A stretch of 64,000 nt of DNA, from IMG/VR virus record IMGVR_UViG_3300017963_000192, positions 124,001 through 188,000 of that record; one strand, written 5' to 3'. The translations under genes were made by a program, and so were the position numbers. Below, one piece after another: positions 13,252 to 53,277 of the stretch. Position 1 is the stretch's first letter. The number at the start of each line of letters is the position of its first letter. The notes under the pieces are model-generated. The model made no database searches, had not been told where the DNA came from, and was given only the letters and a program-made list of their open reading frames with translations.

Positions 13252-13723
13252 TATGAAAAACTATTTTTTCTTTTGACTCCTCTTCAAGAGGAAAATCTTC
13301 ATATTTAAATATATCTGGCATATCTTCTGGGACATCAACAGTTTTTTTGTTTGATGCAACATCTAACATCTTTAAAATTTCATCATATATTTTAGGATTT
13401 GGATTTTTTACACCTAAACTTCTGGCTACTTCTTTAAATTTATCTAAATTAATAAAAGGAGATGCCTCTAATTCATTGTTTATAATGTATATATAAGCCT
13501 CTATATCATTTCTCCAATTAGGTAAATGCCCATACAAATTTTCTAGCTTTCCCCAAGTAACATCGTAGTATCGACTATCTGCTTTTCTATCTAATACTTT
13601 GTTTATAAGATTTGACAATCTTATTTCATCTCGTATCCGAGACGCTATGTCTCTTCTTTTTTTAGAAGATAACAATTTATTGATGTCTACAGCATTTCTA
13701 AAATTCATATTATAATTCCTCAA
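13229..13723 (-). CDS. putative internal head protein
   Basis: MNFRNAVDINKLL motif; RKAD site. Confidence 0.55.
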   Translation of the reverse strand: MRNYNMNFRNAVDINKLLSSKKRRDIASRIRDEIRLSNLINKVLDRKADSRYYDVTWGKLENLYGHLPNWRNDIEAYIYIINNELEASPFINLDKFKEVARSLGVKNPNPKIYDEILKMLDVASNKKTVDVPEDMPDIFKYEDFPLEEESKEKIVFHSEKHKGE

Positions 13724-16700
13724 ACGATTTTTTTAACTCATCATTTAATAGGTGTGGATAGTCAATCCATAATCTTAAATTTTCTACAAATATAAGTACT
13801 TCATCTGTTTCGTGACCGTTAAGACACTTACCATTGACATCCCACAACTTACCTTGTTTTAACTTATAATTAACTTCGGGACTATCCTTGAATTTTTCAC
13901 TTAATTTAAAACCTCTAGGATTATCTGGATCATCAGATATTGGTTCAATTTGATTGAAAACTTTGTATGTACTCATTTCTTCTTGAGATAAATCAAAATT
14001 GCTTTGTTTAAAAGCTTTTCTTATAACTTTTTCATTAGAGTCATTTACAACTGTTATATGTTTAAGTAGACTTTCAGTAAAACTACACTCTTCCATACCA
14101 ACCCAATTAGATATATAGAGATTTTTACCTTGATTAAAGACAGGAATCATTCCTTTCTTTTGAATTTTTTCATAAGAAAGAGTATTCCTAATTAAATTGT
14201 TTTTAGCATCTTTATCCGGTATATCACTATATTTCTTCTCTAGTTTTTCTTTTTGACTTGTCTCCCATTCCTCTAAATCAACAACATCTAACACAAAAAT
14301 TATATTATCATAATCTTTCTTTATAAACTTACCCACTTTATTTAAAAACCTAGAAAGTTGAGGAATATATTCAATAGGACAATCCTTTACATTTATTCCA
14401 GCTATTGAATGTGAACGATGTCTTTGAATATGAGGATCAACATTGTTTCCAAATTCTTCATCATCAAATCCTTCAATACAAGGATACATTATCAAAATTT
14501 CGTTTTTAGCAGAAATTATAGAACCTAGATTTCTACCTTTGCTTAACAATTGTTTAACACCATATCTTAAACCATCATTTTTAACGACATTACTTAATTT
14601 AACAGTATAAACCCCTTGTTCCTGGTACCCTTTTAACTGTCCGTATGCAAAGCAAGTGTTACCAAGATTTCTTAAATGTTTGAAAATTTCAGATTTATCT
14701 AAATTTGAAGATGCAAACATTTTAGTCCATTCCTCAAATTCTCTTGATAGCATTAAATCAGAATAATCTGTTAAATCATCACTATCAGAATAATATTCCT
14801 GATGTATAGGGTAGAATTCAGTAACGCTATATGAATGGAGTTTGCCTTGTTTATATAAATTGGTGAGTATTTTAGAAATATCTTCATTTTCTTGAAGTAT
14901 CCCCTCTTTAAAATCACCATTGCTCTTTTTATCAATCACACTTAATTTATTATTTAAATTAATTAGTAATAATTTAACTTCAGAAGGTATACTAGGTGAT
15001 TCAAGATTTTTGAACCAAGTATCATCATCAACAGGATGAAGATTTTTAGTTATTTCACTATCAAAGTCAGCTTCTTTAACTTTTATTTCTTCTGGACTTG
15101 GTTTAGCTGTTTCAACAGTTCCCTCTTTTCCAATAAATTCTCTTGATTCAGATTCTAAGTCTTCAATATCTTCTTTTGAAATTTCTTCTGTTTCTGCTGT
15201 TTTTTTCTTACCAAGTCCCAACTTGTCTTTAATCTTTGCCGTAACACTACCCGTAGGAGGAGGTGTTCCACCAAGAGGTGAGCCAACACCAGCAGCACTA
15301 CCAACTAATGGATGAATAAAAGCACCAATCTTTTCTTCGAGTTCTTTTTGTTTCTTTTTATTACTTAATTCGTCTTCTAAGCTCATCCCCATTAATTGAA
15401 GAAGTGTTATAGCACTTATAGGTCCTTTACCTTGAGCATAAACATTATTCATAAAAGTCATAAATGCTTGGTCGTCACGCATCATTAATTTTTTATGCCA
15501 TAGTATTTTAGGAACAATGAGACGTTCTTCTAATTCTCTTCCAGATCTACTTACTCTGTATTGTCCAACTAATTCTTTCTTGTCCCTTCTGTACCAATTA
15601 TTTTTCTCTGCCATTATTCTAAAAAATTTATCTTGTATCCAAAGTACTTGAAATAAGTCTCTTTTAGCTTTATACCTTGATAGCTGAACTTGAAGACCAA
15701 CATTTGCTGAATTATATGTTCCTACATTATCAACAAGATAGCTATGGCTGTTTTCAACAGTTAAATTATAAACTTTTTTAGTATTTTTAATCGATTCAAC
15801 AGATTTTACCATTAAATAAACATAATTATCATCAACAAATGCTTTTTGTCCTTTAAATTTATGAGAATCATCAAAGTCAAACGTGCATTCTTCTTCCCAA
15901 ATTAATTTTGCCAAATCAAATGCAAATTTACCATAAATATCGAGTCTAATAATTGGTTTTCTTTTATATTTTGAAGTTAAATTTCTCTTATTGTTATCTT
16001 GTATTGTCCAATTAACTGGAAAACCTATTTGAGCTAATATCAATTCGATTTGATTTGCTAAAATTTTTGAGGTGGTAGTAAAATGAACAGTATGTTGTCC
16101 ATTTCTTTTATTTATTTGATGACAACCATCCCCTCTAAAAATTCCTTTAATCAGTTCTTTCTTTAAATTTAAAGACCAGCCCATCACTTCTTTAGATAAT
16201 TGTTTTTTGTGAGAATATTCTCCAGCGTGTTTCTTAAACCAATTTACTTTATCTTTAACTATATTTTGAGTGATTGATCTTAAATGCAGTGCCCCTTGCT
16301 TGTTAGAAAAACTTGAAATTGGAATTCCTTCTATTGCACAAAGATTTGTTACATCATCTATGTATTTACTTTCATTTTCTCCAAAACATAATCTAATTCC
16401 ATGCAATTCTTTTGTGGTGTGGTGCTTTTCATAACAACCTTCAGCTATAAAATAACCAAGAAGTCTGGCTGATGTTTCTGTAGTATTTGTATCAACTTCT
16501 ACAAAATTTCTTGGAATCATTAAGTAATCCCATTGTTTGATTTCTTCTGCTTTTAATTTCTTAATAGGGTTATAATTTATAGGTAATCCACTTATATATT
16601 TTTTTCTAATTGTTGTCCTTCCTATATCTATTGGATTTAATTTAATTCTTGGTGATTTTCCAATAGAATGAGCGTAGAGTTTGCCCGCATTAACCTCACG

Positions 16701-18068
16701 ACCACATCCACACGCACATTTACGAGGCCATGTCCACACAGACCACTTGTGATTATCAGTACATTTAAACTTCTTTCCTCCCCAAAGGGTTATTTCAATT
16801 ATATTGTTAGGAATCCCCTCGTCCCAATTATCTGTAACTTTTTGTTCCATACCATCTTTATCAATAACAGAATCCCCTACTTCAATATCTTCAACGTTTT
16901 TATATCCTTGAGGAGTTGTGATTTTTGTACCTTTTGTAAAACAAGCATAAGTTGATTCCCCACTTAAAAATTGTTTTCCTACTCCAAGAGCAACCATTTT
17001 CTTCTCTGTAATGTCTGACCACTCTTTTTCAAGTCTCATAACCTTGTCTGCAACAGTAACATATTCAACATTTAAGCCATAATGATAGATTAAACTAAAG
17101 TTTGGGTCGAAAGTTGACTGTTGTAACATTTGAGCCAATGCTCTTTGGTGCGTTTCGTTAGGAATCCACCCCTTGTTAGCGTCACCTAGTTTAAAAATCT
17201 TTAAAGGATAGATAAAGTTGTCAGCAATTGTGATTTGAGCCTCTCTTAATTTGTCTTCGTACATCAAAAGCCTAAAAATTCGGCTTATTATTGAAGTTCC
17301 TCTAACATCATAAGGGTTACTTCTTCTTGCAATGTGTGTAACCTCATCTGGATCAAGTGTTATGTTTTTTCCTGTTAAAACTCTTCTAAAAACGTCTTGT
17401 GGGAGTCTTCCTTTAAGTCTTTGATCTTCGGGTTTTGTTGAATGTACTAAAGATTTAAGTTCATCGTCTGGTATAAGCTCAATTACGCTTTCCTGGTCTG
17501 CAAAAGGAGTGAATCTTACTTCAATAAAATCAGGATTATGAACTATAATATCTTCCCACATTCCAGTTTTACTGTTCCAAGGAGTGTGAATGAAAATTTC
17601 TCCAATTTTCATAAATTCCAAGTCTATTGCGGGTAATTTCGAGAAAAATCCTGTTTTTTCAATACATTCTTGAATATGTGTGTTAATATGAGGGTCATCA
17701 ACTACAATTTCTGCTTTTGAATAAGGTAATTCTGCATGAACATCTAAAACGGCTCCTACTAATTCATCATGATCGTAAAACCATCTACACCATCTATTTA
17801 TTTGCTTTAAAGTTCGTGGTAAATAAATAGCTGTGGTAGTAATCTCTGGATCATAGAATCTTCTGGAAGGATTTCTTAATATATTATTTCCCGCACCGTA
17901 TGCGGCAATTTGATTAAGAAGATTTCCACCACCTAATCCCAAAGATTGAAACTGACCACTCGTTCCTTTCTTAATTCTTTCCCTATCTGTTTCAGCATTA
18001 ATTGTTCTTGGTAACATATCCTGAAAACTTTCAGGTAAAGGAACATTTTCTTGATTGATTGTAGGCAT
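13710..18068 (-). CDS. portal protein with intein and long C-terminal extension
   Basis: WCRWFYDHDELVGAVLDVHAELP, THIARRSNPYDVRGTSII, PLKIFKLGD, GESTYA/SANVGLQ. Confidence 0.85.
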   Translation of the reverse strand: MPTINQENVPLPESFQDMLPRTINAETDRERIKKGTSGQFQSLGLGGGNLLNQIAAYGAGNNILRNPSRRFYDPEITTTAIYLPRTLKQINRWCRWFYDHDELVGAVLDVHAELPYSKAEIVVDDPHINTHIQECIEKTGFFSKLPAIDLEFMKIGEIFIHTPWNSKTGMWEDIIVHNPDFIEVRFTPFADQESVIELIPDDELKSLVHSTKPEDQRLKGRLPQDVFRRVLTGKNITLDPDEVTHIARRSNPYDVRGTSIISRIFRLLMYEDKLREAQITIADNFIYPLKIFKLGDANKGWIPNETHQRALAQMLQQSTFDPNFSLIYHYGLNVEYVTVADKVMRLEKEWSDITEKKMVALGVGKQFLSGESTYACFTKGTKITTPQGYKNVEDIEVGDSVIDKDGMEQKVTDNWDEGIPNNIIEITLWGGKKFKCTDNHKWSVWTWPRKCACGCGREVNAGKLYAHSIGKSPRIKLNPIDIGRTTIRKKYISGLPINYNPIKKLKAEEIKQWDYLMIPRNFVEVDTNTTETSARLLGYFIAEGCYEKHHTTKELHGIRLCFGENESKYIDDVTNLCAIEGIPISSFSNKQGALHLRSITQNIVKDKVNWFKKHAGEYSHKKQLSKEVMGWSLNLKKELIKGIFRGDGCHQINKRNGQHTVHFTTTSKILANQIELILAQIGFPVNWTIQDNNKRNLTSKYKRKPIIRLDIYGKFAFDLAKLIWEEECTFDFDDSHKFKGQKAFVDDNYVYLMVKSVESIKNTKKVYNLTVENSHSYLVDNVGTYNSANVGLQVQLSRYKAKRDLFQVLWIQDKFFRIMAEKNNWYRRDKKELVGQYRVSRSGRELEERLIVPKILWHKKLMMRDDQAFMTFMNNVYAQGKGPISAITLLQLMGMSLEDELSNKKKQKELEEKIGAFIHPLVGSAAGVGSPLGGTPPPTGSVTAKIKDKLGLGKKKTAETEEISKEDIEDLESESREFIGKEGTVETAKPSPEEIKVKEADFDSEITKNLHPVDDDTWFKNLESPSIPSEVKLLLINLNNKLSVIDKKSNGDFKEGILQENEDISKILTNLYKQGKLHSYSVTEFYPIHQEYYSDSDDLTDYSDLMLSREFEEWTKMFASSNLDKSEIFKHLRNLGNTCFAYGQLKGYQEQGVYTVKLSNVVKNDGLRYGVKQLLSKGRNLGSIISAKNEILIMYPCIEGFDDEEFGNNVDPHIQRHRSHSIAGINVKDCPIEYIPQLSRFLNKVGKFIKKDYDNIIFVLDVVDLEEWETSQKEKLEKKYSDIPDKDAKNNLIRNTLSYEKIQKKGMIPVFNQGKNLYISNWVGMEECSFTESLLKHITVVNDSNEKVIRKAFKQSNFDLSQEEMSTYKVFNQIEPISDDPDNPRGFKLSEKFKDSPEVNYKLKQGKLWDVNGKCLNGHETDEVLIFVENLRLWIDYPHLLNDELKKSFEEL
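15711..16943 (-). mobile_element. LAGLIDADG intein in portal (411 aa)
   Basis: CFTKGT..KCTDNHKW..LLGYFIAEG..GIFRGDG..VGTYN|S. Confidence 0.9.
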
Positions 18069-20703: not shown

Positions 20704-21294
20704 TCAAAATGAACTGAATAAAAATTTTTCTTCTTCAAGAATTTTAGGAATGTCTGGTAAATCTACTACAATATCTTTGTATCTTGGATTTTCAATGTTA
20801 TCTTTTATTTTATTAACAACATTCTTCTTGTCTCTAGGATCGATTAACCCTTTATATTCTGAAATCAGATTTAATAATCTCTTTCTTCGTATCAATACTA
20901 TTAAAGTATTCATAAATGTTGAGTCCGGTAATGGGTTTAGGTTGACTTTATATAAATTATTTTTAAATTTTCTTTTAATTCTACTAATTAATCGTACTTT
21001 CTCTAATTCTTCAATTCTTCGTATCTGTGTTCTAATAGATGTTCCTAAAGATTTAGAAATATAATCCAAAGAAACATTAATCTCATCTTTTCCTGTTTTT
21101 GATTGACTAAATTGAGCCATTTCTTTAAGAAAATAGTAAGTTTCCTTTTCTTTAGGAGAAATAATCTTATATCCAAGAAGAACATAAGAGTTCATTTGAC
21201 CTATTTCTATAATAGGGTGCTCCTTTAAAAGGATTTGAAGTCTTTTTAGTTGAGATTCTTTAGACAATAAGAACCATTGATTGTTTTTATCCAT
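20704..21294 (-). CDS. winged-HTH replication-initiator-like protein (paralog 1)
   Basis: SPKEKETYYFL..VSLDYISKSLGTSIRTQIRRIEELEKVRLI..NLYKV; start MDKNN with GGAG RBS; adjacent to iterons. Confidence 0.65.
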   Translation of the reverse strand: MDKNNQWFLLSKESQLKRLQILLKEHPIIEIGQMNSYVLLGYKIISPKEKETYYFLKEMAQFSQSKTGKDEINVSLDYISKSLGTSIRTQIRRIEELEKVRLISRIKRKFKNNLYKVNLNPLPDSTFMNTLIVLIRRKRLLNLISEYKGLIDPRDKKNVVNKIKDNIENPRYKDIVVDLPDIPKILEEEKFLFSSF

Positions 21295-21396
21295 AAGACG
21301 CTCCGATATCATCAAAATAGAGAAAAATAGAGAAACTTTAACACACAATATAATAACCTTTTATTAAAAAGGATATTTTGTCAATAAAAAAACAGA

Positions 21397-21580
21397 GTGA
21401 CAGTTCTGTCACCTATGAAGTGACAGTTCTGTCACCTATAGAGTGACAAGGTTGTCACTCTATAGAGTGACAAGGTTGTCACTACAGGCAAAAGTCCCAC
21501 TTTCCCCCGTAGTGACAGTTTTGTCACAAAAATGCCGATTTTTGAAGTCCCACTTTCCCCCGTAGTGACAGAACTGTCAC
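21397..21580. repeat. six palindromic GTGACA-N4-TGTCAC repeats plus a 27-nt direct repeat; probable replication origin or parS-like site
   Basis: copies start at 21397, 21420, 21443, 21467, 21512, 21565; AAGTCCCACTTTCCCCCGTAGTGACAG at 21492 and 21545; AT-rich flank; at the strand switch. Confidence 0.8.
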
Positions 21581-21780
21581 TCTATTATTATCTGATATAT
21601 AAGAATATTATTAGTTGATATATGCAAAAATTTTTTAGGGGGGAAATTTTAAGATAGGGAAAGAAAAGAAAAAAACCATCTTAAAACTTTCTTATAAAAA
21701 AAAGATTGCAAAAAAACCCGCCCCCTTGTATGTTGTCCATACGACATAGTTATTAAAATAAAGTTTATGGAGGTGAAAAA

Positions 21781-21978
21781 GTGAAAGTAAGTGATTCCTC
21801 TCAAAAGGAATACAAAACAGGGATTCATGTAACTTTGCCATTGTCTCTTGTTGAGAGAATGGACATGTTTTTAATGAACTCTAAAGAGGCTAGTACAAGA
21901 AGTTCGTTACTAGCAGATATATTATCAACATTTTTAGATAATGTTGATAATAAAAATGATGAGATTAAACAATATTAA
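21781..21978 (+). CDS. ribbon-helix-helix (CopG-like) regulator
   Basis: IHVTLPLSLVERMD..TRSSLLADIL; GGAGGT RBS. Confidence 0.7.
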   Translation: MKVSDSSQKEYKTGIHVTLPLSLVERMDMFLMNSKEASTRSSLLADILSTFLDNVDNKNDEIKQY

Positions 21979-21996
21979 ATTAAAGGAGGTTTAAAG

Positions 21997-22971
21997 ATGG
22001 AAGTGATTAATGTTTCTATTAAAAAAATCAAACCTGATCCAAATCAGCCAAGAAAGAGATTCGATGTTGATGCTCTAGAAAGGTTGAGACTCTCTGTTAA
22101 AGATGTTGGAGTGGAGCACCCAATATTAATAAGGGAGAACGGATCTGGTTACACTATTATTGACGGAGAAAGGAGATGGAAAGTTTCTAATGAATTGAAT
22201 TTAAAAACAATTCCAGGTATAGTTGTAGATACGGACAGTGCTCTCGAAGTACAGTTACGTTCAGATTGTTTGAAAGAGGGTTTAAACGTTGACGAAAAGG
22301 ACAAAGCAATTTATCTGTATTACCAACATTGGAACCCTAAAACAAAAACTATACAAAAAGAAAAAAGTGTGGATACTAGTATCCACCCTAATACATTTAG
22401 AGAAATTTCTCGTAGACTTGGTTTATCTAAAGATAGGGTTTTAATTGCGATAGATAGGTTTGAATTGAAAAATAATGATCCAGAATTTATTGAAGAGGTT
22501 GATAAAAAGTACAACCCAAAAAGCAAAAGCTCTTTTGGTACGGTTGATTCTACTATAGCAATGACAAGGGCTTTAAAAGATAAGCCAAAAGTTAGGAAGG
22601 AGCTAATTAAAGATACACTTGAGAGAAAAAAAACAGGCATTTCTAAAAATGCCGAAGTTAAAGATACTATTAAAAGATTAAAAGATCTTGAGGAGGATGA
22701 TGTTGATACTGCAAAGAAAATTCTTAAAGCGGAAAAGGCTAAAGACATGCCTGATGTTAATGTTGTTTTTAAGCGGTATGTAGATAAATACAATTCTCTA
22801 AACGTTGATTTTATGAGTAAGAACTTTGGTAAAGTTAAGGAACACATTAACGATAGTAATGTCCTAAAATTGATGAGGTTATTTGAAGAGGTTATACAAG
22901 ACGTTACTGGAAGAAAATTCATCTTTAAAGAGGCGGATTCAAATAAAGATAGAATTAAAAAATTAACATGA
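21997..22971 (+). CDS. parB: ParB/Srx-domain protein
   Basis: IKPDPNQPRKRFD, PILIR, IIDGERRW. Confidence 0.85.
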   Translation: MEVINVSIKKIKPDPNQPRKRFDVDALERLRLSVKDVGVEHPILIRENGSGYTIIDGERRWKVSNELNLKTIPGIVVDTDSALEVQLRSDCLKEGLNVDEKDKAIYLYYQHWNPKTKTIQKEKSVDTSIHPNTFREISRRLGLSKDRVLIAIDRFELKNNDPEFIEEVDKKYNPKSKSSFGTVDSTIAMTRALKDKPKVRKELIKDTLERKKTGISKNAEVKDTIKRLKDLEEDDVDTAKKILKAEKAKDMPDVNVVFKRYVDKYNSLNVDFMSKNFGKVKEHINDSNVLKLMRLFEEVIQDVTGRKFIFKEADSNKDRIKKLT

Positions 22972-22988
22972 TGTAGAGGAGAGATAAT

Positions 22989-23534
22989 ATGAAATACAAA
23001 TTGCTTGATCGTCAGAAAAAGAAAATGCTTGAGACTTGGTATAAAGACATTATTACTGATGAAGAACATAAAATTAAAAAGTGGGAACGTATAGTTGGAT
23101 GTTTTTTTGATGATAGTAGTTATACTTTAAAAGTAGGTGTTGGAGAAAAATCTCTTACAACAGAAAATGTTATGGATGAACTTGATATAAAATCAACCCC
23201 AAAAAACAGGAGATCTACTCAAGTCGATATTAATTATGCAATGAAAAAATTGCGTAGTTTTGGTGCTCCAGCAGGAGGTATTAAAGTTAATAAAAATACT
23301 TATTATTACATTGCAAAGACAGATAATGAAGTTTCTATGTTGCAAGCTAAAAATGAGAAACGTTTGTTAGGGCATTGTAAGACGTATCTATCTTTAATGG
23401 AGCCAGAGAGTTCTACTGACAGAACATACGCTGTTTTGGAGAATTTTATTGATTCTATTGAAAAAGGGTTAAGACAAAAAGAATCCAAACAGAAAAGATT
23501 ACTTACTTTAACAAGTAGAAGATTGTCAAGATAA
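22989..23534 (+). CDS. hypothetical (possible wHTH) protein
   Basis: 181-aa ORF, GAGGAG RBS. Confidence 0.55.
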   Translation: MKYKLLDRQKKKMLETWYKDIITDEEHKIKKWERIVGCFFDDSSYTLKVGVGEKSLTTENVMDELDIKSTPKNRRSTQVDINYAMKKLRSFGAPAGGIKVNKNTYYYIAKTDNEVSMLQAKNEKRLLGHCKTYLSLMEPESSTDRTYAVLENFIDSIEKGLRQKESKQKRLLTLTSRRLSR

Positions 23535-23545
23535 TAATTATTAAT

Positions 23546-23581
23546 AAAAAACCCGATAATTTAGGTATTATCGGGTTTTTT
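23546..23581 (+). terminator. intrinsic terminator followed by a TTGACA -35 element
   Basis: AAAAAACCCGATAAT..ATTATCGGGTTTTTT. Confidence 0.75.
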
Positions 23582-23689
23582 CTTGACAAAAATTTAATGC
23601 ATCCTAACATATAGTTCTTCAAATCGGACAGTTTCCTTGTCCGTAATAGAAAGTACAACTGTGTGTAGTAAAAAATAAAGGAGCAGCTT

Positions 23690-24607
23690 ATGAATGTAGT
23701 CCAAGTTCCTCTCGATGTCATTGGTATTGATGAAAACCAGCCCAGAAAATATTTTGATGAAGATGCCTTAAATAGTCTTAAAGAATCAATCTTAGAAGAA
23801 GGTATAAGAGTTCCTTTATTAATTAGGAAGGAACTCGGATACGAGACAGGTTATTTACTTGTAGATGGTGAAAGAAGATTTAGAGTTGCTGTTGAGTTGG
23901 ATTTAGAAGACGTTCCTTGTATCGTGGAAGAGACTGATGGGACTGATGTTGAAATTTTTGAAACACAATTACGTCTGGACTGTTTGAAAGAGAAACTTTC
24001 TTCTGAAGAATTGGATAATGCACTTCATAAGTATTGGGGTTTGCTAGGGAATCTTTCAGAGGAAGACATACCAATCCCAAAAACAAACCAAGGGGATTGG
24101 AGAATACCTTATATGTCAAAGCGTATAGGAATTTCTTATACTAGAATTAAAATGGCATTAGATAAACAGGATTTTAAAGAGAGAAACAGAGAGTTTCATA
24201 AAAAGATAAAAGATAAAATAGAGAATAGTGGTGAATCTGAAAAAGAGAACAAAAAATATAATAGGATATTGGAAGAAACTAACAGAATAGCTAATTTAAG
24301 AAATAATGATGAAACTCGAAAAGAAATAATAGATGAATACATTAAGGAAAATGTTCCAGACAATACTCATGAGTTAAGAGAGAAGTTAAGAGAAATTAGT
24401 GAGACGGAGCAACCTTCTAGAGAGACAATTGCCAATATTTTAGGAACACCTATTAATACAAATTCAGAACGACATAGACTAGTAAATATTTTAGAAAAGT
24501 TTAATAAAGACTTGGAAAAGGAAAAAGATAATCTTAATGAACAAGATAAAGTAAAATTAATAGAACTTCTAAAAGAGAGTTTAGAAATATTATATAGATT
24601 TCAATAA
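23690..24607 (+). CDS. parB: second ParB/Srx-domain protein
   Basis: DENQPRKYFD, PLLIR, LVDGERRFR, QLRLDCLKE (cf. QLRSDCLKE in the first copy). Confidence 0.85.
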   Translation: MNVVQVPLDVIGIDENQPRKYFDEDALNSLKESILEEGIRVPLLIRKELGYETGYLLVDGERRFRVAVELDLEDVPCIVEETDGTDVEIFETQLRLDCLKEKLSSEELDNALHKYWGLLGNLSEEDIPIPKTNQGDWRIPYMSKRIGISYTRIKMALDKQDFKERNREFHKKIKDKIENSGESEKENKKYNRILEETNRIANLRNNDETRKEIIDEYIKENVPDNTHELREKLREISETEQPSRETIANILGTPINTNSERHRLVNILEKFNKDLEKEKDNLNEQDKVKLIELLKESLEILYRFQ

Positions 24608-24626: not shown

Positions 24627-25178
24627 ATGCCAGATGATAGGTTTAAGATAATACAACCTAAACCTAAATGTGATTTTTTAGAATCTCTTGAAGATGTTAT
24701 GGAAGAAGATATGGCTTTGTCTTTTTACGATTTCTATAGAAACATCATATCTATTGGTGGTACACCCAAAAAACATAAGAAACTTGGTGATTCTTTAACT
24801 AAAAGAAAAATCAAGAATTTGAAATATATAATATCAAATTATGGTTTAGAAAAAACAATTATGGCAATGAAAATTGTCAAAGATAAGATTGAACGTGGTG
24901 AATTACAAAAAAAAGTTTCTTCTCGGTATTTTGAAAAAATCGCATCAAATTTAAAAAATAATAAATATAAAAGCAGACCTCTTTTTAATCGTGAGATAGA
25001 ACATTCAAAAGAAGTTATTCCCATTCCTACTGAAAAAGTTACAGAAGAATATGATTCTAAATATGAAAGATTTAATTGGATGTATGAGTGTCCCAACTGT
25101 AACAAGGAAATTGATCCTTGGGAAAAACAATGTCCAGAATGCAATGTCTTTTTTAACTGGGCGGAGGTTAAAGTTTAA
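24627..25178 (+). CDS. hypothetical protein with C-terminal zinc ribbon
   Basis: CPNC..CPEC. Confidence 0.6.
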   Translation: MPDDRFKIIQPKPKCDFLESLEDVMEEDMALSFYDFYRNIISIGGTPKKHKKLGDSLTKRKIKNLKYIISNYGLEKTIMAMKIVKDKIERGELQKKVSSRYFEKIASNLKNNKYKSRPLFNREIEHSKEVIPIPTEKVTEEYDSKYERFNWMYECPNCNKEIDPWEKQCPECNVFFNWAEVKV

Positions 25179-26360: not shown

Positions 26361-28547
26361 ATGGCGTATTCACCACCAGCAAATCAACAAGAATCTAATG
26401 AGGGTTTAATTGCTGAGATTAAACTTGGTAGTTTAACAGATGTTAATTTATATTTAAATGATGGGACTTATCCAGCAGATCCAGACTCAAGAGATACAGA
26501 CAATAAAACAGCATTAATGGTAAGTGCTGTTAATTCTCATACTGACCAACCAGACATTACAAATGCTTTATTAGGAAAGGGGGCTGACCATTCTCTTACA
26601 GATAGTGTTGAGGGTAGAACAGCAATGCATTGGTCAGCAGTTGGAAACATGGCACAAACAGCAGAGAATTTAGCTGATGGTGGTTACACAACCCTCGACC
26701 AGACTGATAATGATGGTAACACAGAACTTCATGTTTGTTGTATATATGATGGGCACAATGTTGCTGGTTTTCTTTTAGATACAACATATTGGACTAGTCC
26801 ACCAAATCCAGCTAACATTGAATATTCTAATACCGATACTCACACACCTTACTTGGCATGTGCTAAAAACGATTCTCCTAATACTATTCCAGTTTTAGAT
26901 GGAAAAGGTGCAAACGTATCTGCTACGGATACTAATGGATATAATGCAATGATCATTGCTGCCAGAAACAGTTCTGCAAATGTAATCGCCCCTTTAAAGA
27001 CTGCTGGAACAAGTATCACTTTTAAAGATGGGAATGATAGAAATGCTCTTATGCATTGTGGAATGGTTGATTCATCTTCTGCCGTTGTTGCGGCTTTAAT
27101 TTCTGAAGGAATTCCTAAAGATATATATGACAATGCAACAGACAAAAAAACTGCATTAATGTATGCTGCTGAATATGATGCCTCTACTTCAGGTGTAGCA
27201 ATGATTAACAATAATGTTAATCCAGAAACTTTAGGTAATTATAATTTTACGGCATTACTTTGGGCTGCTTATTATGATAGTGGAGATTTCATAACTTCGG
27301 TGAATGGTTTGGTTAATCTCGATGCAGTAGGGTTGGTTAGTTTTTTAAGTCCTACAACAATTTTAAGCACTACTGAATGGGATGCTTTGTGGATTGCAAC
27401 ATATCAAGAATCTGATAATGCTATTCCTTCTTTGATAGATATAGGTATGGATGTTGATGCCGTTGATACAGGTCATCCTACATCTGAAACAATATTGATG
27501 TTTGCTTCAAGAAATATGAAACCGGATTCAATTACAGCTCTCATAGACAAAGATGCAACCTTTAAAAAGAGAGATGATATTGGTAGGATAGCTATGCATT
27601 TTGGACTAGAGACTAGGGATTTACCAACTATTAATGCATTGATAAATCATCCTGATTTAGATCCTAATACAAAAGATTTGAATGGAGTATCATTGCTAAT
27701 GACGGCTGCTGAATATGATTTATCAACAATAATACCAACATTAATAACAAAAGGAGTCGCTCTTTCTACAAAAGACAATTCTGGTAAGACAGCGTTAATG
27801 TACGCATCCAAAGAAGGCAATATAGCATCTGTTACAGCATTAGTAACTGGTGGAGCAAGTTTAGATTCTAGAGATTTTAGTGATAATACTGCACTTCTTA
27901 TTGCAGCAGATATGAATGGAAAAGGTCACAAAGATGTTGTTGAATATTTAATTAATCAAGGAGCTAATGTTAATGCAAGTAATAATAGAAATCAAACGGC
28001 ATTGATGTGGGCAGCTAAGAAAAACTATACAGATACTATAACATTATTGATAAATAACGATGCTGACTATACTAAAATAGATGATAAAGAATGGACTGCT
28101 CTTAAATGGGCTATCGAATGGGGTAGTAGCAATGCTGAAACTTTATTGCGAACTTACATGAATCCTGAAGCAGAGATTCAAGTAAGACAGAGTGAAACTA
28201 TTTACGTTTCTGGAGAATCTGTGTATGATTTTGGTGAAATTGTAGCAGGAAACTCTGGTGAGGCTATCTCATTTAGAATTTTAAATCACGGTACTTCTGA
28301 TCTAGAAATAGAATATGTTTATACTGAGAGTAATGTGTTTGTTATAAATACAACATCTATGGCAACAACGATTGCTCCAAATGGTGAGACATCTTTTACA
28401 ATAACATTTGCTCCACCAATCATAGAAGATCCAGATAGTGTGAGTGCGGCTCAATATAGGGATACTATAAAGATATCTAACAATGATGTAGATGAAGGTA
28501 TGTTTGAGTTTGATGCTTTTGGTACTGCTTTGGAGCCGGAGGCATAA
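26361..28547 (+). CDS. ankyrin-repeat protein with C-terminal Ig-like (choice-of-anchor D/ASH-like) domain
   Basis: many GxTALMxA repeats; C-terminal YDFGEI..FRILNHGTSDLEI..TIAPNGETSFTITFAP..ISNNDVDEG.FEF..G. Confidence 0.85.
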   Translation: MAYSPPANQQESNEGLIAEIKLGSLTDVNLYLNDGTYPADPDSRDTDNKTALMVSAVNSHTDQPDITNALLGKGADHSLTDSVEGRTAMHWSAVGNMAQTAENLADGGYTTLDQTDNDGNTELHVCCIYDGHNVAGFLLDTTYWTSPPNPANIEYSNTDTHTPYLACAKNDSPNTIPVLDGKGANVSATDTNGYNAMIIAARNSSANVIAPLKTAGTSITFKDGNDRNALMHCGMVDSSSAVVAALISEGIPKDIYDNATDKKTALMYAAEYDASTSGVAMINNNVNPETLGNYNFTALLWAAYYDSGDFITSVNGLVNLDAVGLVSFLSPTTILSTTEWDALWIATYQESDNAIPSLIDIGMDVDAVDTGHPTSETILMFASRNMKPDSITALIDKDATFKKRDDIGRIAMHFGLETRDLPTINALINHPDLDPNTKDLNGVSLLMTAAEYDLSTIIPTLITKGVALSTKDNSGKTALMYASKEGNIASVTALVTGGASLDSRDFSDNTALLIAADMNGKGHKDVVEYLINQGANVNASNNRNQTALMWAAKKNYTDTITLLINNDADYTKIDDKEWTALKWAIEWGSSNAETLLRTYMNPEAEIQVRQSETIYVSGESVYDFGEIVAGNSGEAISFRILNHGTSDLEIEYVYTESNVFVINTTSMATTIAPNGETSFTITFAPPIIEDPDSVSAAQYRDTIKISNNDVDEGMFEFDAFGTALEPEA

Positions 28548-35762: not shown

Positions 35763-38700
35763 ATGAATAAGAATGTTTTCAAAACAGCATTTCAAGAGTT
35801 TATATTCGTTAGAACTTATTCTAGATGGTTAGATAAAGAAAACAGAAGAGAGACTTGGGAAGAAGCAGTAGATCGTTATTGTACATATATGAAAGAAAAG
35901 CATGGAGATAAAATATCAGATAAAGAATATAAGGATGTGCATGATTCCATTTTAAATATGGAAGTAATGCCATCAATGAGAGCTATGTGGGTTGCAGGGA
36001 AAGCTTTAGACATTGAAAACTTTTCTGGTTACAATTGTTTGGGAGAAGATACTGAATTTGTTACAGATAAGGGTGTCAAATCTTTCAGAGATTTTAAAGA
36101 CGGTGATAAGATTGTTGTTTTAACTCATAAAAACAATTGGAAGAAAGCTGTAGTTAAAAACTTCGGAAAGCAGAAACTAAACAAGATTACGTATGGTCTT
36201 GGAGGAAGAGGATTAGACAACATTGTCTATGCTACAGAGGATCACAGGTGGTTTTTGAATGATTCTGAAGAAGTTGTTACAGAAATAAAAGAAAAAGATA
36301 ATCTTTTAAAAAGTTGTTACAGAAAAACTTTTGATTTTGATTCTGCAACTCCAGAAGAAAAAACATATTGGTGTTATGGTTTTGTTTATGGAGATGGGAC
36401 TAAAATAAAAAGAAATGGAGAATATAAGCATAGTTTGGTAAGATTATTAGGTGATAAAAAAATATATTTAAATCGTTTTGAAGAAGTTGGTTTTAAAACG
36501 TCTGTGTCGGACAGTATAGATGGGGGTTGTTATGCTTATACTGGAGAATATTTAAAAACGTTACCTAAAATTGAAAAAGAGCCTTTGGGGAAAATAGAGG
36601 CTTTTGTAGACGGTCTTCTTTGTGCAGATGGAGGTAGAAAATATGTAAAAGACAATTTCTATTTTTGCAACATTCAGCAATCTGGAGAGGAGGGTATTAG
36701 TTTTATAAGAAAAGCTTTTCCTATGTGTGGTTATTTTATTGTTAGAGAGGATGATTATACTGGTGAGACTACTAATTATGGAGAAAGAAATAAAACAATA
36801 AGATTTTCTTTTAACAATCCTTACGCTACAGAGTACAATTCGTTGTATACTGTAAGAAAAATTGATGTTAGTTATAAAGAAGAGGATGTTTGGTGTCTTG
36901 TTGTTGAAGATGATAAAAGTTTTGTTTTGAAGAATGGATTAGTCACAGGAAATTGTGCTTTTACAACAATACAAAATCTAAAGGATTTTGCTGAAATACT
37001 TTATATTTTAATGAATGGTACTGGTGTTGGTTTTTCTGTAGAAAGAAAGTTTGTTAATAACCTTCCTTTAATACAGGAAGTAAATACCAACGAGGCAAAA
37101 GAAATGATAACCTTTGCAGATAGTAAATTGGGGTGGGCTAAAGGTTATGAAAAAGTTTTGAATTGTTTATGGAACGGAATTGACTTTGAGTGTGATTACA
37201 GCAAGATTCGACCAAGGGGTTCTCGATTAAAAACATTTGGTGGACGAGCTTGTCTTACAGGCAATACTGTTGTATACAAAGATAGGAAGAAAAGTAGAGG
37301 TTGCAACGAGATTACTATTAAAGATCTTTATGATATGAAGGTTTCAGGTAAAAGAAAACATTTTTCTGAAAGCAATCAACCTGGACCATCCCATTTTAAT
37401 AAGGTAAAATTGCGTTCTTTAGACGAAGAATCTGGAGTATTTTTTAGAAATCAATTAATAGATGTTGTTGACAATGGTGTTGCTCCTATATTTGAAATAG
37501 TAACTGAAAGTGGTTATAAAATCAAAGCAACTTCTAATCACAGATTTATGAAAGATACAGGAGAATGGTGTTATGTATCTGATTTTTCAAACGGAGATTT
37601 GATTGCTATTAATGGTTCTAAAGAAAAGAAGACAGGTGTTTGCATTGATTGTGGTATATTTGTTAGTAGGAGAGCTATAAGATGCAGATCTTGTGCCAAT
37701 AAAAATCAACAAAAAAATGATTGTTTGCCCACAACTGTTAGACAAAGAAAAGAATGTCAAAAAGATAAAAAAGATTTTTGTGAATTGTGTAAACACAATG
37801 GTTCAGTTAGTAAACTTCAAGTTCACCACAAAGACGGAAATCCTTATAACAATAAAAAAGAGAACAAGCAAACTTTATGTGAAAAATGCCACAGAAAAGA
37901 AGATGCTAGACGAACTACTTTTGGTAATCCTTACTCTCATAGATATTTATCTTATGATAAAATAGTTTCTGTTGACTATGTAGGTAAAGAGCAGGTTTAT
38001 GATTTGGTTATGGAGGCTCCTAACCATAATTTCGTAGCTAACGGGTTTGTTTCACACAACAGTGGTCCAGAACCTCTTAAAAATCTTGTTGATTTCACCA
38101 CAGATATAGTTGAACAAAATAGGGGTTATAGAATTCAACCTATAGACGCACACGATATTTGCTGTAAAATAGCAGAAATTGTTGTGGTTGGAGGAACTCG
38201 CAGAAGTGCTTTGTTAAGTTTATCTGATTTAACTGATAATCAAATGGCTCACGCTAAATCTGGAGAATTTTGGAATACAGCACCACAAAGGTCAATGTCA
38301 AATAACAGCGTTTCTTATACAAGAAAACCTGATATGGTTTCATTTTTGGATGAATGGAAAAATCTTTATAAGTCAAAGAGTGGGGAACGAGGGTTTTTTA
38401 ATAGAGTTGCTACTCAAAAAAAAGCTAGTGAGAATGATAGGAGAGATGGTTCTAAAGTTATTGGAACTAATCCTTCATTGAGAAAAGGAACAAAAATAAT
38501 AACAACGGATGGTCTTTTAAACATAGAAGATTTAGAAGGTAAAGAATTTGATATTATTAATCTTAATGGAAAAGTGAGTAAAGCTAAATGTTGGTTATCT
38601 GGTAAAAGCAAAAAATTATACCGAGTTAAATTTGTTGGAGGACACGAATATTATTGTACTGCTGAACACAAGTGGCCTGTTTATGAAGATGGTGAATATT

Positions 38701-45475: not shown

Positions 45476-46063
45476 TCAATGAAACTTTGAATTGAACGAA
45501 GCTATTGTCATAATTAAATCCTCATTGTCAATGAATTCTTCCAAAGAAGATAAGTTTTGATGTGTTGATCCTTTTCTAACATATTCTTTTATTTGCAACA
45601 TTTGATTTATCCTTGTAAAAGGATTATTGCAAGTTTTGTGCATATAAAGAAGATCTCCTAACCGTTTTCTTTTTAGCAATTTAATTATTGTATTTAAGAA
45701 TGTTGAGTCTGGGAATGGCGGGGTATAAATATAATACCCTCCGTTCGGTATTCTTTTTAGTAATTTATATTTTTCAAGACGTTTTATACGGTATTCTTGA
45801 GATGTTTCGGTAGTACCTAATGCCTCTGATAGAAAGTTTAAACTAGGATTACATATAGGATTTTTATGTTTCCTTACTTGAATGTCTGATAAATCTTTTA
45901 AAATATAATAAGTTTCTTTATCCTGGGCAGATAAAACTTTATATCCGAATCTAATATACATTATGGGATTAACGGGATTACCAATATTAAGTTCTTCGAG
46001 AACAGTATCAATCCTAGATTGCCCACCATTTGATGTAATCAAATACCAATCTTTATCTTTCAT
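45476..46063 (-). CDS. winged-HTH protein (paralog 2 of 20704-21294)
   Basis: GYKVLSAQDKETYYILK, PSLNFLSEALGT, PFPDSTFLNTI..KRKRL match paralog 1. Confidence 0.75.
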   Translation of the reverse strand: MKDKDWYLITSNGGQSRIDTVLEELNIGNPVNPIMYIRFGYKVLSAQDKETYYILKDLSDIQVRKHKNPICNPSLNFLSEALGTTETSQEYRIKRLEKYKLLKRIPNGGYYIYTPPFPDSTFLNTIIKLLKRKRLGDLLYMHKTCNNPFTRINQMLQIKEYVRKGSTHQNLSSLEEFIDNEDLIMTIASFNSKFH

Positions 46064-46207
46064 GCCATAGTGTTGTATGTTATTTTATTTTGTAAGAAAA
46101 ACCTAATATCTTTTTAATGCAGAAATAAAGCAACAAAAATTTTTAAAATTAATATTTTTTTATTGTATTTTATTTTGTTTAATATATTGTTGTCACATAC
46201 AATATGA

Positions 46208-46396
46208 TTGGAGGATATGAAATTAATGGGAAGAAAGAAAATAAATCCTGCGAGCAAGGCGGTAGTTGCTTCTTTTTCAGTAAGCCCACAACATGTTAAG
46301 ATGATAGATGCCCTTGTAAAAAAAGAGAAGAAAGGTAAGTCAGTTTTAATTCAGAATTTAATAGAAAAAGAATACACCAAAAAAATAGGTAAATAG
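46208..46396 (+). CDS. ribbon-helix-helix regulator (start probably the ATG near 46217)
   Basis: SFSVSP..MIDALV..KSVLIQNLIE; GGAGG RBS. Confidence 0.6.
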   Translation: MEDMKLMGRKKINPASKAVVASFSVSPQHVKMIDALVKKEKKGKSVLIQNLIEKEYTKKIGK

Positions 46397-52815: not shown

Positions 52816-53277
52816 ATGAATTTTGAACCGCCTGTTGGATATAGGGTGTTAATTATAAGGACTTTAGAAAGAGGTCACGAAATTAAGTATTATCAAGATG
52901 GGAAAGTATTTACATTAGAAAAAGCATTAGAAATAGTTAAGGTAGCAATCCCTATGTTAACTCCAAACAGAGAAGAGAAAAGACAAAACGGTAGACGTTT
53001 CAAAGAAGACGGTGAAGAAATGTTTACTTTAACTGCTCAAGATCAGCATGGAGTGATGGTTAAGGATGAAGCTATTCCTAAAAGAAGAATAAGAAGACTT
53101 ACCCCTAAAGAATGTGAACGTTTGATGGGATTGGAAGATGATTGGACGAGATGGGGTATTGATGAAGATGGTAATGAATATGAAGTCTCGGATACACAAC
53201 GCTATCGGATGGCTGGAAATGGTGTTGTAGTAGACGTTGTAAGAGAGATTATAAGGAGATTGGTTAATGCAAGTTGA
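52816..53277 (+). CDS. C-terminal fragment of a C5-cytosine methyltransferase
   Basis: RRLTPKECERLMG (motif IX), QRYRMAGNGVVV (motif X); no motif I or PC motif. Confidence 0.7.
   Translation: MNFEPPVGYRVLIIRTLERGHEIKYYQDGKVFTLEKALEIVKVAIPMLTPNREEKRQNGRRFKEDGEEMFTLTAQDQHGVMVKDEAIPKRRIRRLTPKECERLMGLEDDWTRWGIDEDGNEYEVSDTQRYRMAGNGVVVDVVREIIRRLVNAS

What the first reader, a model, noticed from the sequence alone, without database searches (positions are those of the whole stretch)
21397..21600. Palindromic iteron cluster at the strand switch, between an initiator-like HTH gene and RHH/ParB genes
Seen: six GTGACA-N4-TGTCAC palindromes, the first four spaced 23, 23 and 24 nt (about two helical turns), the last two inside a 27-nt direct repeat, followed by an AT-rich tract. 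Inference: replication origin bound by the wHTH protein, or a centromere for the two ParB proteins. This hints at a plasmid-like maintenance module in a large phage.
Basis: partly seen in the sequence, partly recalled or inferred. Interest (0 to 1): 0.6.

Follow-up and report, generated by a model that had tools for sequence, protein, structure and literature searches.

The report
Jumbo-phage winged-helix binding-site hub, origin-like
Six identical 16-bp palindromes sit in a conserved control region of an uncultured 218-kb phage and are most likely read by a new winged-helix protein encoded next door, probably marking the replication origin, though a purely regulatory role cannot be excluded.

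Summary
Six perfect GTGACA-N4-TGTCAC sites lie at window 21397-21580 (0.06 expected by chance). They occur nowhere else in the 217.7-kb phage genome and are identical in three independent assemblies.

They belong to a larger, rigidly spaced grammar conserved in at least 8 related metagenomic phage loci:
- variable 7-NN-7 palindromes;
- a twice-repeated conserved box (AAGTNNCASTT) 8-10 nt before a palindrome;
- two AT-rich 13-mers (ATTATTAYCTGTA) 3 nt after the last palindrome.

The hub always lies between a gene of a new, unannotated winged-helix (wHTH) family and a ParB gene.

Palindrome sequence classes match the wHTH recognition-helix classes one to one. The wHTH protein is predicted to be a symmetric dimer, and its only annotated remote hits are phage replication initiators. 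RHH and ParB1 are absent from relatives, so they are not the readers.

There is no ParA, integrase or resolvase, so "plasmid-like partition module" is not supported. The GC-skew minimum falls exactly here but merely tracks transcription blocks.

Best reading: the palindromes are wHTH-dimer sites. That the hub is a replication origin with autoregulation has a probability of about 0.4. Rivals are a purely transcriptional operator hub (about 0.3) and a ParB loading site (about 0.12).

The parts
20704..21294 (-). Clade-1 winged-helix (wHTH) gene, 196 aa. It is the probable reader of the palindromes and a candidate initiator and autoregulator.
   Evidence: The ATG at 21294 has a GGAG ribosome-binding site. 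AF2 gives pLDDT 88 with a wHTH at residues 47-117. The family has 28 or more members, all unannotated. Its PHROG hits are only to replication-initiator families. The homodimer score is 0.77 against a best control of 0.00.
21379..21392 (+). Conserved TGTCAATAAAAAAA element between the wHTH gene and the first palindrome.
   Evidence: It is shared with L005 and L098 at the same relative place. Its function is unknown.
21397..21482 (.). Four tandem 16-bp palindromes (GTGACAR-NN-YTGTCAC) at 23, 23 and 24 nt, made of two pairs of identical 23-24-nt units.
   Evidence: Relatives have only one site at this position, so this is a lineage-specific amplification.
21492..21527 (+). Direct-repeat copy 1: the conserved box AAGTCCCACTT, then CCCCCGTA, then palindrome 5.
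   Evidence: The box plus palindrome, with 8-10 nt between them, is conserved in L005, L098, L012, L108, L110 and L111.
21528..21544 (+). Inter-repeat element AAAAATGCCGATTTTTG.
   Evidence: The counterpart AAAA(G/A)TGCC...TTTT appears between the two repeat copies in L005, L098, L012 and L100.
21545..21580 (+). Direct-repeat copy 2: the conserved box plus palindrome 6.
21583..21628 (+). Two 23-nt AT-rich direct repeats carrying the conserved 13-mer (TATTATTATCTGA and TATTATTAGTTGA). This is the candidate DNA-unwinding element.
   Evidence: Two copies of ATTATTAYCTGTA, 22-24 nt apart and starting 3 nt after the last palindrome, are seen in L012, L108, L110 and L111; L005 and L098 carry a variant of the same block. 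The region is 87% AT. The motif is unique in the genome and is not a recurrent promoter motif.
21636..21646 (-). Inverted copy (TAGGGGGGAAA) of the TTTCCCCC part of the direct repeat.
   Evidence: inverted repeats I21 and I22. TTTCCCCC has 7 genome hits, 3 of them here.
21726..21742 (+). TTGTATGT plus the small palindrome GTATG-N5-CATAC, just upstream of the RHH gene. This is a candidate RHH operator.
   Evidence: Three of the 4 intergenic TTGTATGT copies in the genome lie upstream of the two RHH genes.
21781..21978 (+). RHH-like 65-aa gene, the first gene of an extra cassette.
   Evidence: There is a weak HicB-like/RHH Pfam hit. The gene is absent from the hubs of L005, L012, L108, L110 and L111.
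21997..22971 (+). ParB1, a ParB_N protein with the GERR motif. It is a paralogue, not the conserved hub partner, and carries an internal 18-bp perfect palindrome at 22369-22386.
22989..23534 (+). 181-aa ORF of unknown function, the last gene of the extra cassette.
   Evidence: No Pfam or PHROG hit.
23546..23588 (+). Hairpin terminator (CCCGATAAT...ATTATCGGG plus a T run) followed by a TTGACA promoter-like hexamer. It separates the cassette from ParB2.
   Evidence: Sequence printed.
23690..24607 (+). ParB2, the orthologue of the single ParB that flanks the hub in every relative. It is an orphan ParB with no ParA in the genome.
   Evidence: Seven of 7 clade-1 loci with enough flank have it.
24627..25178 (+). 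Conserved 183-aa protein with a C-terminal zinc ribbon and a borderline DnaB_2 (DnaD-like) match.
   Evidence: DnaB_2 scores 22.2 bits against a cut-off of 22, and only 2 of 5 orthologues match. There is no PDB relative.
45476..46063 (-). Clade-2 paralogue of the wHTH protein (35% identity). It is not part of the hub and is paired with a divergent RHH gene at 46226-46396.

Best explanation
The six palindromes are binding sites for symmetric dimers of the 196-aa wHTH protein encoded immediately to the left. They form part of a conserved multi-element hub: palindromes, a conserved box, and two AT-rich 13-mers at fixed spacing. The hub sits at the head of the phage's 54-kb DNA-replication gene block.

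The hub most likely works as the phage's replication origin, in the manner of lambda O at ori-lambda or of iteron plasmids. In that model, wHTH dimers occupy the sites. A second factor that does not vary between phages occupies the conserved box. The adjacent AT-rich 13-mer repeats melt so that the phage's own DnaB-type helicase can be loaded. The sites nearest the wHTH gene also repress its promoter.

Shown here: the sites, their uniqueness, the conserved grammar, and the match between site class and helix class. Inferred: binding, dimer occupancy, unwinding and origin function. The orphan ParB2 encoded on the other side probably acts on or near the hub, in organisation or silencing, rather than in ParA-driven partition.
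For: - The sites are perfect, six-fold, and unique in 217.7 kb. They are reproducible in three assemblies.
- The same grammar is found in 8 clade-1 loci, with four different palindrome classes but the same 7-NN-7 geometry and spacing.
- In the complete 252.9-kb relative, its own palindrome also occurs only at the hub.
- Recognition-helix classes match half-site classes: RTQIRR with GTGACA, RTQ(R/K)NR with GGAAAT, (E/D)CQSRR with GACTT, SQQARR with TGTAGCAT.
- In the L005/L098 pair, ParB is about 90% identical with an identical HTH segment. The wHTH protein is only 74% identical with changes in its helix, and the palindrome half-sites differ.
- RHH and ParB1 are missing from relatives that keep the hub.
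- The wHTH model is confident (pLDDT 88). The predicted homodimer scores 0.77 against a best control of 0.00, the runs agree in at least 73% of contacts, and partner pLDDT is at least 80. That mark was reached by 20 of 30 solved pairs and 1 of 23 single chains. The interface leaves the recognition helix and wing free.
- The family's only annotated PHROG hits are six replication-initiator or loader families, and no transcription-regulator family is hit.
- The longest structural alignment is to the N-terminal domain of a staphylococcal plasmid initiator, 4pta (Z 9.3, rmsd 3.0, 100 of 121 residues).
- The 13-mer repeats sit 3 nt from the last palindrome but 130-290 nt from the ParB start, and they are not a recurrent promoter motif.
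- The phage encodes PolA, a DnaB-type helicase, a primase, RNR, RecA and SbcCD in the block that starts at the hub.
Against: - There is no experimental or read-depth evidence of initiation.
- GC skew is uninformative.
- The wHTH fold is equally close to CRP/FNR, MarR and ArsR regulators, and no initiator family threshold is met.
- Relatives have only 2-3 sites, a number typical of operators.
- The hub lies between divergent genes, where operators are expected.
- Clade-2 paralogues sit in compact wHTH/RHH pairs that look regulatory.
- The match between site class and helix class also follows phylogeny, and ParB co-diverges with the same phages, so only the L005/L098 pair separates the two candidates.
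- The DnaD-like call for the neighbouring gene is borderline.
Confidence: 0.4

Rival explanations
1. The hub is a purely transcriptional operator. The wHTH dimer is a repressor or activator that binds the palindromes to control its own promoter and the divergent promoter of the ParB/replication operon, like lambda OR/OL with CI. It has no role in initiating replication.
For: - The sites lie between divergently transcribed genes.
- The 16-bp palindromes at 23-24 nt match lambda operator spacing (established knowledge).
- In L012 the proximal site lies about 30 nt from the wHTH start codon.
- Relatives have 2-3 sites.
- The nearest folds include CRP/FNR, MarR and ArsR regulators.
- Clade-2 paralogues form compact wHTH/RHH pairs.
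Against: - No sigma-70-type promoter above chance was found in the region.
- There is no regulon elsewhere.
- The conserved box and the strictly positioned AT-rich 13-mer pair do not vary with the regulator, and a simple operator does not need them.
- PHROG hits are exclusively to initiators.
- No lysogeny genes are present.
Confidence: 0.3
2. The hub is a ParB loading site or centromere. The palindromes are parS-like sites for the orphan ParB2 (or for ParB1 in this phage). CTP-bound ParB clamps load there and spread, to organise, segregate or silence phage DNA.
For: - The 16-bp palindromes are adjacent to a parB gene, as with chromosomal parS and F sopC (established knowledge).
- ParB flanks the hub in 7 of 7 loci.
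- The GERR CTP-binding motif is conserved.
- ParB's helix also differs between the GACTT group and the other groups.
Against: - There is no ParA.
- ParB has no N-terminal extension.
- The ParB helix is nearly the same (SYTR-I/V-K/D) in the GTGACA and GGAAAT groups. It is identical in L005 and L098, whose palindromes differ.
- ParB1-type genes in other phages lack upstream palindromes.
- ParB1 has its own candidate intragenic palindrome.
Confidence: 0.12
3. The palindromes act as structures (RNA hairpins, terminators or DNA cruciforms), or as packaging or recombination signals, rather than as sites for the wHTH protein or ParB.
For: The two outer palindromes score as terminator-like hairpins followed by T runs, one on each strand. 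The palindromic character is kept while the sequence changes between phages.
Against: - All six copies share the same arms while the central 2-4 nt and the flanks vary. This points to sequence-specific reading, not mere pairing.
- Stems are only 6-8 bp.
- There is no Rfam match.
- The region lies upstream of both flanking genes, where terminators are not expected.
- It is internal in three assemblies.
Confidence: 0.05

Closest known systems
Phage lambda origin (ori-lambda) with the O initiator
   Same: Several palindromic sites about 20-24 nt apart are each read by a dimer of an N-terminal winged-helix domain, next to an AT-rich region that melts. The wHTH family has weak hits to O-like PHROGs 678 and 18020.
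   Different: Ori-lambda lies inside the O gene, and O carries a C-terminal domain that recruits P-DnaB. Here the sites are intergenic and the protein is a 196-aa wHTH plus a helical dimerisation region. There is no Pfam match to the O family. The hub also has a conserved box and a 13-mer pair, and is always flanked by ParB.
Iteron-type plasmid replicons (RepA_N of staphylococcal pSK41/pTZ2162; RepE; P1 RepA)
   Same: The layout is initiator gene, repeated sites, AT-rich element, with expected autoregulation. The longest structural alignment is to the RepA N-terminal domain, 4pta (Z 9.3, 100 of 121 residues). A possibly DnaD-like protein is encoded nearby.
   Different: Classical iterons are direct, asymmetric repeats read by monomers or lie inside the rep gene, whereas these sites are symmetric. 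No Rep family threshold is met. The Z score is in the range common for winged helices.
Lambda/434-type operator arrays (OR/OL with CI and Cro)
   Same: Palindromic sites of 16-17 bp at 23-24 nt spacing lie between divergent genes, one of which encodes the HTH dimer. In this phage a small RHH gene lies on the other side.
   Different: There is no CI-like sensor or protease domain and no integrase. The RHH is absent from relatives. Extra conserved non-palindromic elements are present.
ParABS centromeres and chromosomal parS-ParB near oriC; RK2 KorB-OB
   Same: 16-bp palindromes lie beside a parB gene with a conserved CTP-binding motif. The pairing of an origin-like region with parB resembles bacterial chromosomes.
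   Different: There is no ParA and no N-terminal ParA-contacting peptide. The ParB reading helix does not track the palindrome class.
TubZRC partition of Bacillus plasmids and Clostridium phage c-st
   Same: A wHTH dimer (TubR) binds iterons, and this phage encodes a tubulin homologue.
   Different: The tubulin gene is 46 kb away in its own operon and is weakly PhuZ-like. TubR was not among the structural matches.

Membership tests
Lambda O-type origin and initiator | The initiator belongs to the phage O family (Pfam Phage_rep_O or equivalent). | tested here: not met
   No Pfam family above cut-off in any of the 28 members. Only weak O-like PHROG hits, with a best E of 3.6e-6, in 7 of 28 members.
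Lambda O-type origin and initiator | Several palindromic initiator sites lie next to an AT-rich region. | tested here: met
   There are six sites, followed by an 87% AT tract with two 13-mer repeats. Relatives have 2-3 sites.
Lambda O-type origin and initiator | The origin lies inside the initiator gene. | tested here: not met
   The sites lie 100-290 nt upstream of the wHTH gene, in the intergenic region.
Lambda O-type origin and initiator | Replication starts at the site. | not testable with these tools
   Only assembled contigs are available, with no raw reads or RNA. Skew is confounded.
Iteron plasmid replicon (Rep_3, RepA_N and others) | A Rep protein of a recognised family. | tested here: not met
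   Pfam finds nothing. The PDB profile's best hit is an ArsR-like regulator at E 0.0015. The fold match to 4pta has Z 9.3 only.
Iteron plasmid replicon (Rep_3, RepA_N and others) | Directly repeated asymmetric iterons. | tested here: not met
   Each site is a symmetric 7-NN-7 palindrome, although the units are tandemly arranged.
ParABS partition system | A ParB with the ParB_N domain and CTP-binding motif. | tested here: met
   ParB_N E-values are 1.6e-20 and 1.5e-18. GERR is invariant.
ParABS partition system | A cognate ParA-type ATPase. | tested here: not met
   No AAA_31 or CbiA match in the 217.7-kb record, which is 88% complete. None is seen beside ParB in any relative.
ParABS partition system | The ParB N-terminal peptide that contacts ParA. 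| tested here: not met
   The ParB_N domain starts at residue 3 in both ParBs, so there is no N-terminal extension.
ParABS partition system | parS is bound by the ParB. | tested here: inconclusive
   Adjacency is conserved, but the ParB helix does not track the palindrome class.
CI/Cro-type immunity switch | A repressor with a CI-like (HTH_3 plus S24) architecture, together with lysogeny genes. | tested here: not met
   No such domains are present. There is no integrase or resolvase.
TubZRC | The tubR-tubZ operon is adjacent to the iterons. | tested here: not met
   The tubulin gene is at genome 191.6 kb, 46 kb from the hub, with different neighbours.

The most novel reading that the evidence does not exclude
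A lineage of uncultured jumbo phages uses a chromosome-like 'origin plus parB' hub. It is built around a previously undescribed initiator family whose DNA specificity has diversified into at least four classes, which could act as incompatibility or immunity types between co-infecting relatives. A second invariant factor reads the conserved box. An orphan CTP-type ParB, working without ParA, is loaded beside the origin to organise or silence the replication module.
Probability: 0.25. Interest if true: 0.75.

Novelty: new variant of a known kind. Interest (0 to 1): 0.55.

Why it matters
Replication origins and initiators of jumbo phages are almost entirely unmapped, and the role of the frequent orphan ParB genes in virulent phages is unknown. 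This hub offers a defined 250-bp DNA element and a small, confidently modelled protein family with natural specificity variants. It also supplies an always-adjacent ParB. Together they make both questions directly testable in vitro, even though the phages are uncultured. The site-class/helix-class pairs give ready-made specificity-swap experiments. If the hub is only an operator, it is still the master switch of the phage's 54-kb replication gene block.

Tried and rejected
- GC skew as origin evidence. The global cumulative minimum is at window 21592. However, the genome consists of one minus-strand and one plus-strand transcription block. The four credible counter-oriented genes follow their own coding strand. 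The complete relative G001 has several blocks, with skew flipping at each. Rejected as confounded.
- Depletion of the GTGACA half-site outside the cluster. A first-order Markov model suggests three-fold depletion, but a maximal-order model does not (33 observed, 31.5 expected). Dropped.
- Sigma-70 promoters in the region: no more than chance.
- The conserved box and the 13-mer as recurrent promoter motifs: they are not recurrent.
- Known RNA families and tRNAs: none in the window.
- GenBank phages: no relative of the region, of the wHTH protein, or of full-length ParB2.
- Pfam and PDB sequence profiles for the wHTH family: nothing beyond a generic winged helix.
- The DnaD-like identity of the 183-aa neighbour: borderline, in 2 of 5 orthologues, with no PDB relative. 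Kept only as a hint.
- Similarity between the two RHH proteins: none.
- Literature searches found no description of this module.
- Sequencing runs: only assembled DNA contigs, with no RNA or raw reads. Read laying was therefore not run, since it could show neither ends nor depth gradients.
- The L005 record is not held as a whole genome, so uniqueness of its palindrome could not be tested genome-wide.
- A single-protein scan of viral contigs with ParB1 found nothing. One search failed on a frame slip, which was corrected.

Full report
**What is there.** The window is positions 124001-188000 of a 217,703-bp virus record with about 31% GC, rated 88% complete. Six perfect GTGACA-N4-TGTCAC sites start at window 21397, 21420, 21443, 21467, 21512 and 21565. 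Shuffled sequence gives a mean of 0.06 matches. Read more closely, they are 7-NN-7 palindromes, GTGACAR-NN-YTGTCAC. The motif is found nowhere else in the genome. Copies with up to three mismatches are at or below chance and lie in coding sequence. The 486-bp intergenic region is letter-for-letter identical in three assemblies from different samples, so the array is not an assembly artefact.

**Finer anatomy.** The left gene most likely starts at the ATG at 21294, which has a GGAG ribosome-binding site. The right gene starts at the GTG at 21781. The gap between them is 486 bp. Reading from left to right, the gap contains these elements:
- a conserved TGTCAATAAAAAAA at 21379;
- four tandem sites, made of two pairs of identical 23-24-nt units;
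- two copies of a 36-nt direct repeat (21492 and 21545), each holding the box AAGTCCCACTT, then CCCCCGTA, then a palindrome;
- two 23-nt AT-rich direct repeats (21583-21628), in a tract that is 87% AT;
- an inverted copy of TTTCCCCC at 21636.

**Neighbours.**
- Left: a 196-aa winged-helix (wHTH) protein.
- Right: an RHH-like 65-aa gene, ParB1 (324 aa), a 181-aa ORF, a hairpin terminator with a TTGACA-type promoter, and ParB2 (305 aa).
- Next come a 183-aa zinc-ribbon protein with a borderline DnaB_2 match, then SbcD, an ankyrin protein and SbcC.
- The same block also holds an intein-laden RNR, a PolA-UDG fusion and RecA. Further along it are a DnaB-type helicase and a Toprim primase.
- So the hub heads the phage's 54-kb DNA-metabolism block, and it is the genome's only major divergent strand switch.

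**Relatives.** The wHTH protein belongs to a family of 28 or more proteins. All are unannotated, none has a Pfam domain, and none has a relative in GenBank phages. A tree splits the family into two clades, each with 100/99 support.
- Clade 1 contains the window protein and every array-associated member.
- Clade 2 contains a second paralogue that each of the three large phages also carries (window 45476-46063). Clade-2 genes are paired with a conserved divergent RHH gene in 5 of 5 loci and have no palindrome array.
- All seven clade-1 loci with enough flank (window, L005, L098, L012, L108, L110, L111) have a divergent ParB across a gap of 320-490 bp.
- That ParB is the orthologue of ParB2. RHH, ParB1 and the 181-aa ORF are an extra, separately terminated cassette found only in this phage.

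**A conserved DNA grammar with variable palindromes.** In all clade-1 loci the gap reads in the same order: one or more palindromes, then two direct repeats of {box AAGTNNCASTT, 8-10 nt, palindrome}, then 3 nt, then two copies of ATTATTAYCTGTA 22-24 nt apart, then A/T-rich DNA up to ParB. L005 and L098 carry a variant of the 13-mer block.
- The box and the 13-mers are conserved. The palindromes are not.
- The half-sites are GTGACAR (window), GTGACAT (L108), GGAAAT (L005), GGWAAY (L098), TTGACTT (L012 and L111), TCGACTT (L110) and TATGTAGCAT (L100).
- In the complete 252.9-kb relative G001, its own palindrome again occurs only at the hub.
- The box and the 13-mer are not recurrent motifs in the genome, so they are not general promoter elements.
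- The 13-mers keep a fixed distance from the last palindrome but a variable distance (130-290 nt) from the ParB start.

**Who reads the palindromes.** RHH and ParB1 are excluded as primary readers, because relatives keep the hub without them. That leaves the wHTH protein and ParB2.
- The wHTH recognition helix falls into classes that match the half-site classes one to one: RTQIRR with GTGACA, RTQ(R/K)NR with GGAAAT, (E/D)CQSRR with GACTT, and SQQARR with TGTAGCAT.
- ParB's helix is nearly the same (SYTR-I/V-K/D) in the GTGACA and GGAAAT groups.
- The L005/L098 pair is the one comparison that separates the two candidates. Their ParB proteins are about 90% identical with identical HTH segments. 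Their wHTH proteins are 74% identical with two helix changes. Two half-sites have changed in a coordinated, mirror-symmetric way.
- The AF2 model of the wHTH protein is confident (pLDDT 88, pTM 0.78).
- The predicted homodimer scores 0.77 against a best control of 0.00. The runs agree in at least 73% of contacts and partner pLDDT is at least 80. That mark was reached by 20 of 30 solved pairs and 1 of 23 single chains. The interface leaves the recognition helix and wing free.
- I put the probability that the wHTH dimer is the palindrome reader at about 0.7.

**What the hub does.** Several points favour a replication origin:
- The family's only annotated PHROG matches are six replication-initiator or loader families, and no transcription-regulator family is hit.
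- The longest structural alignment is to the N-terminal domain of a plasmid initiator, 4pta (Z 9.3, rmsd 3.0, 100 of 121 residues).
- The composite, rigidly spaced architecture includes an invariant AT-rich 13-mer pair.
- The hub is unique in the genome and has no regulon.
- It heads a self-sufficient replisome gene block.

Several points count against it:
- The fold is equally close to CRP/FNR, MarR and ArsR regulators.
- No initiator family threshold is met.
- Relatives have only 2-3 sites.
- The position between divergent genes suits an operator.
- The clade-2 wHTH/RHH pairs look regulatory.

I therefore rate "origin with autoregulation" at about 0.4, "operator only" at about 0.3, and "ParB loading site" at about 0.12.

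**GC skew.** Three results show it reflects transcription rather than replication.
- The genome is one minus-strand block plus one plus-strand block.
- The four credible counter-oriented genes have a skew near zero or follow their own coding strand.
- The complete relative G001 has seven blocks, with the skew flipping at each. That gives three local minima, and the hub is only one of them.

The inflection therefore neither supports nor refutes an origin.

**Partition.** The record holds no ParA-type ATPase and no integrase or resolvase. Both ParBs begin directly with the ParB_N domain. A tubulin homologue exists 46 kb away in its own operon and is weakly PhuZ-like. Orphan ParB hits without ParA are a known pattern in virulent phages (bioRxiv 10.1101/2024.12.31.630880). 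A classical plasmid-like maintenance module is therefore not supported.

**Comparison and novelty.** Functionally the hub is closest to ori-lambda with the O protein, where dimers bind palindromic repeats next to an AT-rich region. It also resembles iteron replicons with autoregulated initiators. The formal alternative is a lambda-type operator array. It is not a member of any of these families by the tests run. The new features are:
- the protein family;
- the tripartite conserved grammar;
- the diversification of specificity into at least four classes;
- the constant pairing with an orphan ParB in a lineage of uncultured jumbo phages.

I rate it a new variant of a known kind.

**Limits.** No binding, unwinding or read-depth data could be obtained, because only assembled contigs exist for this phage. 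Read laying was therefore not used. No alternative genetic code was used.

Noticed in passing
window 22369-22386 (inside ParB1); L091:6331-6354: An 18-bp perfect palindrome, GTGGATACTAGTATCCAC, lies in the variable linker of the ParB1 gene and is unique in the genome. The ParB1-like gene of L091 has a 24-bp perfect palindrome at the same relative position with the same ACTAGT core. This is a candidate intragenic parS for ParB1-type proteins. L090 and L010 have none.
   Followed up: partly
window 45476-46396: A second, clade-2 paralogue of the wHTH protein (35% identity) is the only credible counter-oriented gene in the plus-strand block. It is paired with a divergent 56-aa CopG-like RHH gene across a 163-bp AT-rich gap. 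The same pairing is seen in 5 of 5 clade-2 loci.
   Followed up: partly
window 21726-21733, 46073-46080, 46195-46202: TTGTATGT occurs 20 times in the genome. Only 4 copies are intergenic, and 3 of those lie upstream of the two unrelated RHH genes. It is a candidate shared operator motif.
   Followed up: partly
window 21781-23588: RHH, ParB1 and the 181-aa ORF form a separately terminated cassette (a hairpin terminator at 23546-23581, then TTGACA). It is inserted between the hub and the orthologous ParB2 and is absent from all relatives.
   Followed up: partly
genome 191615-192694 (outside the window; L092:1486-2565): A 359-aa tubulin homologue scores 62 bits on Pfam Tubulin and hits the PhuZ PHROG weakly. 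It is preceded by a 56-aa RHH-like ORF and a 142-aa ORF. A Toprim primase and an 848-aa DnaB-type helicase frame lie just upstream.
   Followed up: partly
window 13710-18068, 35763-41573, 53267-59050: Three very large genes are interrupted by inteins or homing endonucleases. One is an unidentified 1452-aa protein, one is a ribonucleotide reductase with several intein segments, and one is a UDG-PolA fusion with LAGLIDADG, HNH and intein domains.
   Followed up: no
window 26361-28547: A 728-aa ankyrin-repeat protein is encoded between SbcD and SbcC. Its position is conserved in the relative L005.
   Followed up: no
genome end, 217,650-217,703 (outside the window): The record ends in tandem CGCCTAAACCTT repeats, a likely assembly break. 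A longer 234,748-bp contig carrying the same wHTH protein exists.
   Followed up: no
G001 (L115-L127), the whole 252,876-bp relative: The record is flagged as having direct terminal repeats, but the repeat is only 72 bp. That more likely reflects a circular or permuted assembly. Its gene layout has seven strand blocks, against two in the window's genome.
   Followed up: no
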